From NCBI RefSeq assembly GCF_009834535.1, contig NC_045721.1, forward strand, positions 23,622,001 through 23,686,000: a stretch of 64,000 nt of DNA, read 5' to 3'. The translations under genes and the position numbers were made by a program. The first letter of the stretch is position 1, and each line of letters opens with the position of its first letter. Positions 3,990-44,917 of the stretch are shown one piece after another. This DNA is from Camelus ferus (taxonomy: Eukaryota). A model generated the notes under the pieces. It did not search any database. It worked only from the letters and a program-made list of their open reading frames with translations, and was not told the origin of the DNA.

Positions 3990-4047
3990 CTGGTGGAACC
4001 TGGCTCATAAAGACGAGAATGGTGAAGAAGGGGACTGCAATCCTCAT
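3990..4047 (-). CDS. DEFB108: Beta-defensin 108, exon 1 (signal peptide); exon 2 not found in window
   Basis: 58-nt exon ATG(4047)..CCAG|gtaaca encoding MRIAVPFFTILVFMSQVPP+G, phase-1 donor, closely matching recalled human DEFB108 MRIAVLLFAIFFFMSQVLP. No six-Cys exon between 1 and 3989, so exon 2 probably lies left of the window; intactness unknown. Confidence 0.8.
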
Positions 4048-5093
4048 GGCTGGAGAACGGAGGAGGCTTGGCTTCATTTCCAGAGGCAGAGAAAGCTTCC
4101 GTCTGCGGTTCTGCAGCACCGCGGAATGCCTTGTCCGGATGTTAAGTGCCCTTCTGTACCTCATTAGGGCTATTCATGGACAGAAGTGTTCTCTGCATGC
4201 AGAGCGGCCCTCATAAGAAGGCTGAGAAGCCTTGTTTTGTTGGGCACTCAGTGCATCAGAAGGATGCGGGCGCACACCTTTGACCAGAAAGCCTTGTTAA
4301 ATGGGAACATGAGCTACGAACGCTTTGGCACCAGAACAAGGTGTACGAGCAAGGACCTGCCTATCCTGAGTTCCAGCGAGCCAGGCTGTGCTGAGAAACC
4401 GGTTGGTTTAGTTAGTGACTAGACATCTTGTCCCTGAGTGCTTCTGGGCTTTACTAGCCCTCCTCATGACTGATCACTCGCTCCTGGTCTGAAGGCTCTG
4501 CTCGCGGCACGGTACTTAGCTTACATGTCAGTTTGCTCAGCGCACACTGAAACCGCCCCAGAAGGTGTGAGCCTTGTTAAGACCGTGCTTTGTTCGTCAG
4601 CGCCGAGGAGGCAGTTGAATCATGGGGTAATTTAGTCTCACATCCTCATCCAGTAGAACCATGGCAGGGCAGTGAAATGCCTCTGAACATGGAGGAATTT
4701 AAGTTCTGAAGTCTAACTAGAGGCACAGACATCGGCAGGAAATTGTCTTCCCTGAATCTCAGTGGCGTCTGCGTAGGTTTAGATCTGTTGATTCAAGATC
4801 AGGGAACTCTCAATCGTTTTGCATAAAAACAATGGGGAGAAGTTGCTTCTGAATGCAGACACGTAGACCCACTCCAGAAAATGTTAGTTTGGTGGGATGG
4901 GATGGAGCCTGGAGGTCTACGTTTTAAACAGATTTCCCAGGTACCAGTTCTGAAATGCATTCTGGAATACTCAGTGGAAAATCTCAGCTTAGATCATCTC
5001 TAAACTTCTTTCTATCTCTAGTAGTATAGTATTCTCAGTTCTCTTGTCTGAGAGTAAATCTCGTGTTTGGCTTTTATGACTGCAACAACATAT

Positions 5094-42005: not shown

Positions 42006-44917
42006 TTAATTATTCTCTCTTTTTTTGCAGCAAAATGGTGTCAGTTCAGCTCGGCAGCCTCCAATCTTATCTTCAAAGGAAAGGCATTCGACTTCGCAGC
42101 GACCATCCATTCTCTGACAGTGTAGTTGTCTTTGAAATCCTCCTCTGGCTAAGTGAAGAAAACAGTCGGTCTTCAGTTATCCAGTACTGAATTACTGGAA
42201 GGCAAAATTCCACCACTCAGGCCAAGCCAGAACTCCACACTACCGAATCTCATGGCGACACAGAGTGTAAGTGTAGACAGCAGAAAAGCAGATGTGACCT
42301 GAACAGCTGTGTCTGAGCTCGGATCCCTGGTTCAGTATATACAGGGTGCTTCCTTTGTACTCAAGTAGAAAAACCAAGAAAGGGTTCCCTCTGCTATAAT
42401 CTTTGTTGGACATAGAGAAACAGTGTTTCTTCCTGGGGCGGGGGGAGACAATATCCTTTCTAATTCCAATAAGCAGTCTTTTGCAATAAAAGATTTTTTT
42501 CCTATCTCCAAAATAATAGTCTCTTGTATATAACAAAAGGTACAGAGTGTGCTATTTACAGTGGAGGCAGGGCAATGGCAGCCGTGTGCCTTGGGCATGT
42601 GGTTGTGGAGTGTCACAGTTTGGGGGTAAAGCTTCAGTATTTTCTTTGGTATTAAAAGAAGCACAGTACGAACCTGCTCTGCCAGTGACGTCTGCAGAAT
42701 AACGTGTTTAGCTCTGACAAGCCGTGTGAGAGAGGCATAGACACTGTGCATTCATTCAGGACAAAGAAACTAAGCTGAAGAGAGTAAAATACTTTAAGAG
42801 ACAATGACTAGGGAAAATGGTGATGTGTATTCCCTGGAGAAATCATAGGAAGAACTGGCAGTTGCTCTCAAAAGGTGTAATACTTATTCTCAGAGAGAAC
42901 GGCTCTGGGGCGGGGAATGTGTGCACATTAGCCGTCGTCTGTCTCAGACACTACCACACTGAAGGCTCATTAATGCCCAAGGTGGGGCTAATCAGTGGGG
43001 AAAAAATCACAGGCACTGAGATTTCTGCTCGGAGTAAAGGGAAACATTTTAAACAGTCCAAAGTTGAACGCAGGATACTGTGAGTAACAGATCACTGAAA
43101 TTTATCCAGCATCAGGGCAATCAATCAACATCTTCAGGGAAAAAAAAAAGATCAGTCTTCAGAAAAAGCCCTATTATTATTTCCATTTATTGGAAATAAG
43201 TTGAAACCCAGAGTTCATACATCTTACAAGGTTTGAAACTGAGGTTCAGCCTCAGATATTTTGGCATAATAGTCTGTTCATTTCCTCTTTTATTGATCAT
43301 GAAACTCACTTCCAGCACTGAGAGTGTCTGTGGTTGTGGTGGTGGTGGTCCTAACGTGTGTCCACTCTGTGCTGCTTACTGAGTCAGATGGGCCTGAGCT
43401 GAGTTTTGGGGACAGGGAGCCCCTAAGTATCTGCTTCCCTACATTGGTTTGAATCACTTGGAGTCCTGATGAAAGGAGATGGAGAGGACAGATAAAATTT
43501 CTTTCTCTACTCTGGATCCATTGTCTGACCTCCCAGGAAACAGACTGAGGGCAAAAGTTATTTTACAAGAGAGGCTGTGAAACACGAGGGCAGTATTCCT
43601 CAGGTCTGTTCCTTCTTTCTATTCCTGCCTGTTTTCAAAAGTGCAATGGAAATGACCACCTCCCAGGAAGTCCTTCTTGTTCCCCCAGTTAGAACCGAAC
43701 TTCTATTTCCATGGCTTCTCTTATTTTTCACCTTCATCGCACGTATGAGAACTGTTTTGTATCATAGTTCTTTGTCCATCTGTCTGTCTCATCCATTCAC
43801 TATATACACTTTAAATTATCAAGTGCCTGTTTATTATTATAGGCAACCTATTTTTGACCAACACAGAAATAAAAGACTAATAAACTTTAAGCAAATTAAG
43901 AGCAAAGACCATGATCTAATGTTCACCTCCACTTTACCTCCCTTTATTATAGGATGTTTATATATAATTATATTATATATCATTACATTCCAGAACAATT
44001 TCTCGTTAAGTGATAAGCACACATTCAATAGCTATTGACCGGCTAGCCTTCTGCAGCCAGATTGTGTAATAAATAAGTGTAGAAATTCAGAAACCATAAG
44101 GAAGAAATAGACAGGATACCTCATGGTGCATGGACAGTCCCATCGGGAAAGGCTTCATAACAGGAGGAATGAAGGATAGTTGAGGAGGGAATGGAGGTAA
44201 AAGTTTATTAGAGATGGGTTCTTGGCTGAATTGAGCAAAGACAGCCCAGTTCAAAGGACTTAAAAGAAAACTAATCAAGATGTTAATGTTTGAAGTGATG
44301 TGATTTTCCAGCAGTATATGAGAGCTAGAAAGTCCAAGATCATCTAAGGTTAAGAGATTCATGAGATTCATTTAAGAGATTCATTTACCAATTAGTGGGA
44401 CATGAAAAAATAGACTGGTAAGAACCTGTTATTGTAAGTTTGATTTCATTTAGGCTGTAAAGGCTGTTCTTCTCTGAATTAGCAAGTGTCGTCTGCCTCT
44501 TGAGATTTTTTTCTCATTTTAAAACAATCATTTTGTCATACACTGAAGCTGGGTCAAAGATTACAGAATGAGGAAACAGATCTAAATGAAAAGGGAAATC
44601 TGAACCTGTTGGTAGAGCTTTTAGGGAAATTAACTAGATATTCTTCTGGTTGGAGGTGGTCTGGATCAGGGTGGTCCCATTAATATGTGTCCAAACTTAG
44701 GAAAAGATTTCCTGTAACTAGTTTGTTTCTGAGACCTTTTTAGGACATAGGACTGAATCAAGTACTTTTCTGAAAGATGAGCTTTCTTCTCAAAAGACAG
44801 ACCCTGAATAGATTTTGCCTCAAAAGACATCCTTATATCTATCAAGATTTCTCTCTTACCTGAGAAGATTTGAGCAAGAAGGATGATGGCAGCAAGAATA
44901 AAGGAAAAGATTTTCAT
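42006..44917 (-). CDS. DEFB107: Beta-defensin 107, 2 exons, 66 aa
   Basis: Exon 1 44917-44860 (MKIFSFILAAIILLAQIFS+G, gtaag donor); exon 2 42148-42006 (ARGGFQRQLHCQRMDGRCEVECLSFEDKIGGCRAELTPFCCKKRENN*); matches recalled human DEFB107. Confidence 0.95.

What the first reader, a model, noticed from the sequence alone, without database searches (positions are those of the whole stretch)
3990..44917. A FAM90A-USP17L-ZNF705-like cassette with DUX-type motifs inside the beta-defensin cluster
Seen: order DEFB108, FAM90A, USP17L, FAM90A pseudogene, KRAB-ZNF, defensin-like remnant, DEFB107. Known: human FAM90A, USP17L and ZNF705 co-occur in the copy-number-variable 8p23.1 duplications and related loci, and are reported as DUX4-induced, cleavage-stage genes. 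Inference: this low-copy camelid locus preserves the ancestral module later amplified in primates, an embryo-genome-activation unit (zinc-knuckle protein + deubiquitinase + KRAB repressor) nested among epididymal defensins.
Basis: partly seen in the sequence, partly recalled or inferred. Interest (0 to 1): 0.7.

Follow-up and report, generated by a model that had tools for sequence, protein, structure and literature searches.

The report
Camel FAM90A-USP17L-ZNF705 genes among defensins
This camel DNA really carries one intact copy each of FAM90A, USP17L and ZNF705 inside the beta-defensin cluster, the single-copy counterpart of a block that is multiplied on human chromosome 8p23.1, but nothing here shows that the three genes act as one embryo-activation unit.

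Summary
The gene order is real, and the finding's coordinates fall on exon edges. On the window: DEFB108-like exon 1 (3990-4047, -), an intact four-exon FAM90A (9100-11704, -, 366 aa), an intact intronless USP17L (19745-21334, +, 529 aa), a decayed FAM90A relic (~24980-25531, +), ZNF705 (27644-31873, -) and DEFB107 (42006-44917, -). DEFB105 and DEFB106 follow.

The 'defensin-like remnant' could not be found. Both N runs lie inside one truncated L1 between FAM90A and USP17L. Their flanks are collinear with about the right spacing, and no cassette gene crosses them.

The same genes are neighbours in warthog, white rhino, giant panda, stoat, takin, horseshoe bat and rabbit, but order and orientation vary. 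Burrows et al. 2010 had already inferred ancestral proximity of USP17 to defensin genes and noted FAM90A beside USP17 in horse.

DUX evidence in camel is weak:
- The only conserved site, at -195 of USP17L, is a one-mismatch variant (TAATCCAATTA) shared with a whale.
- The one exact motif (12773) lies in an L1 fragment and is not conserved.
- Across eight USP17L promoters, exact DUX-type motifs are enriched (4 seen, 0.09 expected).

RNA-labelled runs gave only unspliced, DNA-like coverage.

Verdict: correct annotation of a known neighbourhood. The embryo-activation reading is plausible by homology but untested.

The parts
3990..4047 (-). DEFB108-like beta-defensin exon 1: signal peptide of 19 aa plus one base (phase-1 intron), GT donor at 3989. 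Exon 2 is not in the window.
   Evidence: The name DEFB108 rests on my memory of the human signal peptide and was not tested.
9100..11704 (-). FAM90A, intact. Coding exons 11704-11591, 11141-10942 (CCHC zinc knuckle), 10514-10418 and 9789-9100 (includes the stop); 366 aa.
   Evidence: dN/dS of the last exon is 0.64-0.74.
12773..12783 (-). The only exact DUX-type 11-mer near the cassette (TAACCTAATCA), 1.08 kb upstream of the FAM90A ATG. It lies in an old L1-derived fragment and is not conserved in warthog.
13100..15300 (.). About three diverged tandem units of ~650 bp, each with a CCAATCA-type core. Homologous units lie upstream of FAM90A in takin and horseshoe bat.
16960..18000 (+). Truncated L1 (3' part of ORF2 and tail) that contains both N runs (17055-17310 and 17501-17780). 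The flanks are collinear.
19449..19633 (+). USP17L proximal promoter: near-DUX site TAATCCTATCA (19449-19459), CACGCCC box (19534-19541), homeodomain site TAATCCAATTA (19550-19560), inverted CCAAT box GATTGG (19574-19579) and TATA box (19626-19633).
19745..21334 (+). USP17L (DUB/USP17 family deubiquitinase): intronless, 529 aa from the conserved ATG, with Cys and His boxes present.
   Evidence: dN/dS is 0.39-0.51.
24980..25531 (+). Decayed FAM90A relic (last-exon part only, frameshifts and stops). It lies in a block (23.9-25.5 kb) that also sits downstream of USP17L in rhino and warthog; panda has a FAM90A fragment at the same relative place.
27644..31873 (-). ZNF705 (KRAB plus C2H2 fingers). 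Coding exons 31873-31862 (ATG), 30274-30146 (KRAB A), 29424-29326, 28795-28715 and 28297-27644.
   Evidence: dN/dS of the last exon is 0.09 against warthog.
34500..35500 (.). Unassigned CpG island (GC 0.61-0.74, CpG observed/expected 0.9). Its ORFs have no Pfam or Atlas match.
42006..44917 (-). DEFB107: exon 1 44917-44860, exon 2 42148-42006; 66 aa.

Best explanation
The window holds the camel counterpart of the FAM90A / USP17L / ZNF705 neighbourhood that sits in the beta-defensin cluster of placental mammals (human 8p23.1). Here it is single-copy: one intact gene of each kind plus one old FAM90A relic, flanked by DEFB108-like and DEFB107 / DEFB105 / DEFB106 genes.

The three genes are separate transcription units, each with its own promoter. 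FAM90A and USP17L lie head to head about 8 kb apart. USP17L and ZNF705 lie tail to tail about 6 kb apart. Their co-location is inherited from an old, rearrangement-prone neighbourhood and is not an operon-like unit.

Shown here:
- Gene identities, intact reading frames and purifying selection (strong on ZNF705, moderate on USP17L, weak on FAM90A).
- Linkage of the same genes in seven other species.
- A USP17L core promoter alignable across mammalian orders: CACCC box, paired-homeodomain/DUX-type site, CCAAT box, TATA box.

Inferred from human and mouse work:
- USP17L, and probably ZNF705 and FAM90A, are expressed briefly in cleavage-stage embryos and/or the germline.
- USP17L acts there as a deubiquitinase; in mouse its targets are H2AK119ub1 and ZSCAN4.
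- ZNF705 acts as a KRAB repressor with a conserved DNA target.

In camel the USP17L homeodomain site carries ATTA in place of the ATCA half-site, so direct DUXC drive is uncertain. Another paired-like homeodomain factor, or NFY at the embedded CCAAT, may use the site.
For: Gene identities and models.

Selection: dN/dS is 0.39-0.51 for USP17L, 0.64-0.74 for FAM90A and 0.09 for ZNF705.

Linkage in other species:
- Horseshoe bat and rabbit: FAM90A and USP17L head to head.
- Warthog: ZNF705 - FAM90A - relic - USP17L.
- Rhino and panda: DEFB107 - USP17L - relic - FAM90A.
- Stoat: FAM90A and USP17L tail to tail.
- Takin: ZNF - FAM90A - ZNF705.

Promoter: the alignment shows the conserved boxes. Exact TAAYBBAATCA motifs occur in 4 of 8 USP17L promoters against 0.09 expected, Poisson P about 3e-6. 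Camel and Kogia share TAATCCAATTA.

Literature: PMC2874809, PMC4255768, PMC5323140, PMC9691860, PMC11145015, PMC12316976; bovine genome-activation motif TAAYCYAATCA (10.64898/2026.03.05.709741); KLF, NFY, OTX2 and DUX4 motifs in bovine embryo open chromatin (10.1101/2023.04.10.536281); DUXC present in dromedary (PMC13558733).
Against: - No camel expression data. The RNA-labelled runs that hold these sequences tile introns and upstream DNA without a single splice joint, so they look like DNA or unspliced RNA.
- No exact DUX motif lies in the camel USP17L promoter, and none lies within 1 mismatch near the ZNF705 start.
- The exact motif upstream of FAM90A sits in an L1 fragment and is absent from the warthog orthologue.
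- The four promoter motifs across species are not phylogenetically independent: rhino and bat share one position.
- The DUX consensus contains a CCAAT core, so NFY is an alternative reader of the site.
- FAM90A's dN/dS of about 0.7 is close to relaxed evolution.
Confidence: 0.7

Rival explanations
1. One reading: the three genes form one conserved, DUX(C)-driven embryo-genome-activation module that is co-induced at the 4- to 16-cell stage. The camel keeps its ancestral form, which was later amplified in primates.
For: - Human and mouse relatives are cleavage-stage or DUX-linked genes (PMC5323140, PMC9691860, PMC11145015, PMC12316976).
- DUX-type motifs are enriched in USP17L promoters of laurasiatherians.
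- Dromedary has DUXC (PMC13558733).
- The trio is linked in many orders.
Against: - Only USP17L shows a conserved homeodomain site, and the camel copy has a core mismatch.
- FAM90A and ZNF705 have no conserved motif in camel.
- Order and orientation differ between species, so no shared bidirectional promoter is conserved.
- There is no camel expression evidence.
- Other reported expression is testis, brain or cytokine-induced (PMC4255768, PMC2874809).
Confidence: 0.2
2. The FAM90A-USP17L adjacency in this camel assembly is a scaffolding error. On this reading, the segment before the N runs (DEFB108-like exon plus FAM90A) was joined to the USP17L segment through a shared L1 repeat.
For: - Warthog, rhino and panda have FAM90A on the other side of USP17L.
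- The break in collinearity falls somewhere in 13.9-18.8 kb, the interval that holds the N runs.
- A join through a repeat would also look collinear within the repeat.
Against: - The three L1 pieces are in order, on one strand and correctly spaced: 269 vs 272 nt, and 282-294 vs 235-267 nt.
- A 190-bp island between two N runs fits masking of a continuous sequence better than real contig ends.
- The same head-to-head FAM90A/USP17L adjacency exists in horseshoe bat and rabbit.
- USP17L through DEFB106 (17781-64000) is gap-free, so FAM90A cannot lie between the relic and ZNF705 in camel.
Confidence: 0.08
3. The camel copies of FAM90A and/or USP17L are unexpressed relics on their way to loss, and only ZNF705 and the defensins are functional.
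For: - FAM90A dN/dS is 0.64-0.74.
- The camel USP17L promoter site is mutated relative to rhino.
- FAM90A appears to have been lost beside USP17L in Kogia.
- No spliced RNA was seen.
Against: - Both reading frames are complete, with canonical splice sites and catalytic boxes.
- dN/dS is below 1 in every comparison.
- The promoter variant is shared by camel and whale, so it has been kept rather than decaying.
Confidence: 0.1

Closest known systems
Human 8p23.1 low-copy repeat ('core duplicon') inside the beta-defensin copy-number-variable region: DEFB109, FAM90A, FAM66, ZNF705, USP17L (PMC4255768; PMC2874809)
   Same: FAM90A, USP17L and ZNF705 lie within about 23 kb, embedded among beta-defensin genes and next to DEFB107 / DEFB105 / DEFB106.
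   Different: The camel block is single-copy, not multiplied or copy-number variable in this window. No DEFB109-like exon was found and no FAM66-type transcript can be assessed. It holds one ancient FAM90A relic in place of arrays of FAM90A copies.
[quoted passage not shown] 2010, PMC2874809)
   Same: A single intact USP17-family ORF beside FAM90A and defensins in a laurasiatherian. [quoted passage not shown]
   Different: That observation was 'data not shown', without gene models, ZNF705, promoter comparison or order across species.
Mouse Usp17l 2-cell genes (PMC12316976) and tandem USP17 arrays (human RS447, as named in PMC2874809; Bos javanicus and elephant)
   Same: The same intronless deubiquitinase family.
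   Different: Camel has one copy with a TATA/homeodomain-site promoter. The Bos javanicus array copies (4.6-kb unit) have a GC-rich promoter without that site or the TATA box. The literature read here says the mouse genes are not linked to defensins.

Membership tests
DUB/USP17 deubiquitinases | UCH (USP) catalytic domain with Cys and His boxes | tested here: met
   PF00443 E 2.3e-57 over residues 95-387. The NTCYVNA and HSGWSCHRGHYF motifs are visible in the ORF.
DUB/USP17 deubiquitinases | Intronless ORF of about 530 aa whose nearest relatives are named USP17-like | tested here: met
   529 aa from the conserved ATG. Hits are 'ubiquitin carboxyl-terminal hydrolase 17-like protein' in many mammals at 60-68% identity.
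DUB/USP17 deubiquitinases | C-terminal hyaluronan/RNA-binding-type motif | tested here: inconclusive
   PF04774 scores 20.3 bits, just under the 21.8-bit cut-off.
FAM90A | CCHC zinc knuckle of the zf-CCHC_6 type near the N-terminus | tested here: met
   PF15288 E 4e-23, profile positions 2-42 of 42.
FAM90A | Homology over the long last exon to proteins named FAM90A, and an intact multi-exon frame | tested here: met
   90 homologues found, best E 2e-54. Names given. 366-aa model with GT-AG introns, 54% identical to bovid FAM90A over its full length.
ZNF705 (KRAB zinc finger) | KRAB A box plus a C2H2 finger array, orthologous to annotated ZNF705 | tested here: met
   PF01352 E 2.8e-26. C2H2 families hit. 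Two differences in 318 mapped residues from Camelus bactrianus ZNF705G; 77-88% identity to ZNF705A-like proteins of other laurasiatherians.
Beta-defensin 107 | Two-exon gene: signal-peptide exon, then a cysteine-motif exon | tested here: met
   PF13841 E 9e-7. The spliced product is identical to Camelus dromedarius beta-defensin 107A.
Beta-defensin 108 | Mature-peptide exon with the six-cysteine motif, orthologous to DEFB108 | not testable with these tools
   Only exon 1 (signal peptide) is in the window. No exon 2 was found in 1-3975. An Atlas search gave nothing.
8p23.1-type core duplicon | FAM90A, USP17L and ZNF705 together inside the beta-defensin cluster | tested here: met
   All three lie between 9.1 and 31.9 kb, flanked by defensin exons at 4.0 kb and at 42-59 kb.
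8p23.1-type core duplicon | A DEFB109 member and multi-copy, copy-number-variable organisation | tested here: not met
   No further defensin exon was found. Each gene is single in the window, and the USP17L protein cluster is small.
DUX4/DUXC target genes | DUX motif (TAAYBBAATCA, or the bovine TAAYCYAATCA) in the promoter, conserved | tested here: not met
   Camel USP17L has only one-mismatch sites at 19449 and 19550. The exact site at 12773 is L1-derived and not conserved. Exact sites do occur in the rhino, bat, stoat and panda USP17L promoters.
DUX4/DUXC target genes | Induction at embryonic genome activation or by DUX expression | not testable with these tools
   The runs laid (X1, X3, X4, X25) show contigs over introns and no splice joints.

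The most novel reading that the evidence does not exclude
The USP17L core promoter (CACCC box, DUX/paired-homeodomain site, CCAAT box, TATA box) may be an ancient embryonic-activation promoter. DUX-type sites are kept by turnover in Perissodactyla, Chiroptera and Carnivora. In Cetartiodactyla (camel and a whale) the site has become the palindromic paired-type site TAATCCAATTA, which would imply a hand-over from DUXC to another paired-like homeodomain factor. ZNF705, whose fingers are unusually constrained for a KRAB zinc finger (dN/dS 0.09), would then be a conserved repressor partner in the same early-embryo programme.
Probability: 0.2. Interest if true: 0.5.

Novelty: new member of a known kind. 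Interest (0 to 1): 0.3.

Why it matters
The window gives a clean, single-copy reference for a gene block that in humans is multiplied, copy-number variable and hard to assemble. That makes gene models, promoters and selection pressures readable.

It shows that the FAM90A-USP17L-ZNF705-defensin linkage predates primates: it is found in Laurasiatheria, and FAM90A-USP17L also in rabbit. It also shows that USP17L promoters of several orders carry DUX-type sites. Both points fit the known 2-cell and 8-cell expression of these families in mouse and human.

It does not open a new question by itself, because the linkage and its likely ancestry were already in print.

Tried and rejected
- Defensin remnant. 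Strict and relaxed six-cysteine patterns, a signal-peptide scan, tblastn with the window's own defensin exons and a profile of 31 defensins found no remnant in 30.3-42 kb. The best hits (32763-33096, -) have i-E 10-13 and do not read as a defensin.\n- Nucleotide self-comparison found no second FAM90A copy. Only a protein profile revealed the relic.\n- Expression. RNA-labelled runs from a 'reproductive system metagenome' study hold 52-71% of USP17L words and 28-58% of FAM90A-span words. Laid on 8700-13000, their contigs cover introns and upstream DNA at depth 2-6 with no joints and about 1% differences from the window. They are therefore DNA or unspliced RNA of another camel, and give no verdict on expression.\n- ORFs in the GC-rich stretch at 33-36 kb and elsewhere in 31.9-40.8 kb had no Pfam match. 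One was also tried in the Atlas without result.\n- Pfam on the L1 flank peptides gave nothing, so collinearity was tested against L1 copies in other species.\n- An Atlas search with the DEFB108-like exon gave nothing.\n- Tandem Repeats Finder missed the 650-bp units; the repeat finder showed them.\n- Hendrickson 2017 and Whiddon 2017 are not held in the library.\n- The bovine and porcine embryo papers checked do not mention these genes in their main text.\n- Elephant and tarsier loci came back without DNA. The horse ZNF705 protein was not on record.\n- Earlier scan notes: none near this place, and none with the word 'defensin'.
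Full report
**What is in the window**

ORF listing and Pfam found a 544-codon open frame at 19700-21334 (+) with a complete ubiquitin C-terminal hydrolase domain. They also found a C2H2 finger exon at 27644-28345 (-) and a beta-defensin exon at 58.7 kb.

A database search with the hydrolase returned USP17-like proteins from dozens of mammals at 60-68% identity. It also returned the window's own 529-aa product, which starts at the conserved ATG at 19745.

The finger exon is 99.5% identical to 'zinc finger protein 705G [Camelus bactrianus]' and 77-88% identical to ZNF705A-like proteins of warthog, seal, horse, sheep, bats, pangolin and hedgehog. 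Mapping that protein gave five coding exons on the - strand, from the ATG exon at 31873 to the stop at 27644, with two residue differences. The window therefore comes from a Camelus genome.

**FAM90A**

The 224-codon frame at 9100-9774 (-) has no Pfam match. An exhaustive search found 90 homologues, and their sources name them FAM90A in buffalo, takin, oryx, horseshoe bat, mustelids, snow leopard, tree shrew, squirrel monkey and rabbit.

With those as guides and the sequence itself, I built a four-exon model: 11704-11591, 11141-10942, 10514-10418 and 9789-9100.
- All three introns are GT-AG.
- The frame is open for 366 aa.
- It aligns end to end with bovid FAM90A at 54% identity.
- Exon 2 carries the zf-CCHC_6 knuckle (E 4e-23).
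- Like the ruminant proteins, it lacks about 90 residues found in the middle of the bat, carnivore and primate forms.

**The FAM90A pseudogene**

Nucleotide self-comparison found no second copy. A profile of 35 FAM90A proteins hit 25143-25415 (+) at i-E 1.4e-6, with weaker collinear pieces across 24980-25531 in other frames. Translating that stretch shows stops.

The surrounding block (23.9-25.5 kb) aligns with sequence at the same place, downstream of USP17L and on the same strand, in white rhino and warthog. Panda has a FAM90A fragment there too. The relic is therefore old, not a camel novelty.

**Defensins and the finding's edges**

- A signal-peptide exon runs from the ATG at 4047 to 3990 (-) with a GT donor at 3989. 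The finding's start is that exon's last base.
- It resembles the human DEFB108 signal peptide as I remember it, which is a lead and not a test. Its second exon is not in the window.
- The finding's end (44917) is the ATG of DEFB107. Its spliced product (exons 44917-44860 and 42148-42006) is identical to Camelus dromedarius beta-defensin 107A.
- Beyond the finding lie a DEFB105-like exon (50669-50755, -) and a DEFB106-like gene (56342 and 58720-58806, +). Those two names again rest on memory of the human peptides.
- I could not find the 'defensin-like remnant' between ZNF705 and DEFB107 by any of five approaches.

**The N runs**

The two N runs (256 and 280 letters) lie in the FAM90A-USP17L intergenic region. 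The frames on their flanks read as successive parts of an L1 ORF2 3' end on the + strand.

I compared coordinates only, without looking up or filling any letters:
- The flank before gap 1 and the 190-bp island match one L1 copy in the warthog locus. The spacing is 272 nt there and 269 nt in camel.
- The island and the flank after gap 2 match two warthog L1 copies with spacings of 235 and 267 nt, against 294 and 282 nt in camel.

The flanks are thus collinear parts of one L1, and the N lengths are about right, which fits masking of a continuous sequence. No cassette gene crosses a gap. A repeat-mediated misjoin cannot be fully excluded, and I could not test it with reads.

**Is the order shared?**

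Loci fetched around orthologous proteins gave the following:
- Horseshoe bat: USP17L and FAM90A head to head, 5.6 kb apart, as in camel.
- Rabbit: the same, plus a second FAM90A.
- Warthog, in camel orientation: USP17L - relic - FAM90A(-) - about 16 kb - ZNF705(-).
- White rhino and giant panda: DEFB107 - USP17L - relic - FAM90A(-).
- Stoat: FAM90A and USP17L tail to tail.
- Takin: ZNF - FAM90A - ZNF705 in tandem.
- Bos javanicus and elephant: tandem USP17L arrays.
- Kogia: USP17L plus a partial second copy, with only the 3' flank of FAM90A left.

The neighbourhood is clearly old, but order and orientation are fluid. Camel differs from its nearest sampled relatives in having FAM90A upstream of USP17L. 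Because 17781-64000 is gap-free, FAM90A cannot lie between the relic and ZNF705 in camel. A duplication of the USP17L-relic-FAM90A unit followed by losses would explain the change.

**DUX-type motifs**

The DUX4 consensus TAAYBBAATCA occurs twice in 64 kb against 0.47 expected, and 10 of 100 shuffles do as well. The bovine genome-activation motif TAAYCYAATCA (10.64898/2026.03.05.709741) occurs once, at 12773 (-), 1.08 kb upstream of the FAM90A ATG. That site lies in an old L1-derived stretch, and the orthologous warthog sequence does not have it.

The USP17L proximal promoter is more interesting. It aligns between camel, rhino, horseshoe bat, stoat and rabbit, and shows a CACCC-type box, a homeodomain site, an inverted CCAAT box and a TATA box. 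The homeodomain site varies as follows:

| Species | Site |
|---|---|
| Rhino | TAATCCAATCA |
| Horseshoe bat | TAATTGAATCA (same position as rhino) |
| Stoat | exact TAATCTAATCA, about 50 bp away |
| Panda | exact motif on the other strand, over the CCAAT box |
| Camel and Kogia | TAATCCAATTA (one core mismatch) |
| Bos javanicus array copies | no homeodomain site and no TATA box |

Four exact motifs in eight 300-bp promoters compare with 0.09 expected from the rest of the 289 kb in hand (P about 3e-6).

Three caveats apply:
- The species are related, and two of the sites are homologous.
- The motif contains a CCAAT core that NFY could read.
- L1 ORF2 itself encodes the motif (stoat locus), so raw motif counts are inflated by L1.

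DUXC is reported in dromedary (PMC13558733).

**Selection**

Nei-Gojobori estimates:
- USP17L: dN/dS 0.39-0.51 against five species.
- FAM90A last exon: 0.64-0.74.
- ZNF705 finger exon: 0.09 against warthog.

All three look like genes under selection. ZNF705 is strongly constrained, which suggests a conserved DNA target.

**Expression**

Four RNA-labelled runs of one 'reproductive system metagenome' study are the best RNA holders of both USP17L and FAM90A. Laid on 8700-13000, contigs from three of those runs and from a fifth run of another study cover exons, introns and upstream DNA alike at depth 2-6. They show no joints and about 1% differences from the window. This is DNA or unspliced RNA from another camel and says nothing about expression.

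**What was already known**

- Burrows et al. 2010 (PMC2874809) mapped USP17 genes inside the human beta-defensin repeat. They noted a single horse USP17 gene near FAM90A and defensin genes, and proposed that the ancestral gene lay near defensin and olfactory-receptor genes.
- Ottolini et al. 2014 (PMC4255768) described the DEFB109 / FAM90A / FAM66 / ZNF705 / USP17L low-copy repeat as a core duplicon.
- FAM90A1 is induced by DUX4 (PMC5323140).
- ZNF705A/E are hubs of the human 4-cell-stage module (PMC9691860), and ZNF705A/B/D/G are listed among zinc-finger genes upregulated in human androgenote embryos (PMC11145015).
- Mouse Usp17l are 2-cell genes acting on H2AK119ub1 and ZSCAN4 (PMC12316976).

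**Verdict**

Its functional half (a DUX-driven embryo unit) remains untested, and the motif evidence in camel itself is weak.

Noticed in passing
window 13100-15300: About three diverged tandem units of ~650 bp lie between FAM90A and USP17L. Each has a CCAATCA-type core (for example 14027 and 14671). Homologous units lie upstream of FAM90A in takin (L005 2.8-6.0 kb, one with an exact TAATCCAATCA at 4313) and in horseshoe bat (L002 9351-9509).
   Followed up: partly
window 34500-35500: A CpG island (GC up to 0.74, CpG observed/expected 0.9) lies between ZNF705 and DEFB107 with no recognisable coding content. The adjacent stretch just upstream of it (34311-34608) aligns to the horseshoe bat locus about 2.9 kb downstream of FAM90A (L002 15466-15754).
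   Followed up: partly
window 27647-28297 vs L003 13571-14263: The ZNF705 finger exon is under strong purifying selection (dN/dS 0.09, 88% identity between camel and warthog). As I recall, KRAB zinc-finger genes usually evolve faster than this.
   Followed up: partly
L004 4159-4169: The L1 ORF2 coding sequence (peptide NNPIKKW) contains an exact DUX-type motif, TAATCCAATCA. L1 copies therefore inflate genome-wide counts of this motif.
   Followed up: yes
L008 766-16232 (Bos javanicus); elephant record: USP17L sits in head-to-tail arrays (4.6-kb unit in Bos javanicus). The Bos javanicus array copies have a GC-rich promoter that has lost the homeodomain site and the TATA box seen in single-copy species.
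   Followed up: partly
L005 21709-21731 (takin): Two adjacent exact DUX-type motifs (TAATCTAATCA and TAATCCAATCA) lie about 1.8 kb upstream of the ZNF705 KRAB exon. That is roughly where the ATG exon would lie, judged by the camel spacing. Camel has nothing similar there.
   Followed up: no
L007 12988-14713 (Kogia breviceps): A partial second USP17L copy follows the intact one. Only the 3' flank of FAM90A is recognisable, which suggests loss of FAM90A at this place in the whale.
   Followed up: no
window 50669-50755 (-) and 56342-58806 (+): DEFB105-like and DEFB106-like genes follow DEFB107. As I recall it, this is the same order as in the human cluster.
   Followed up: partly
runs X1-X4 and X25 on window 8700-13000: Runs filed as RNA-Seq of a 'reproductive system metagenome' contain camel contigs that cover introns and intergenic DNA. 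Their presence in a holder list is not evidence of expression.
   Followed up: yes
window 21345-21405: A (CA)n microsatellite starts a few bases after the USP17L stop codon.
   Followed up: no
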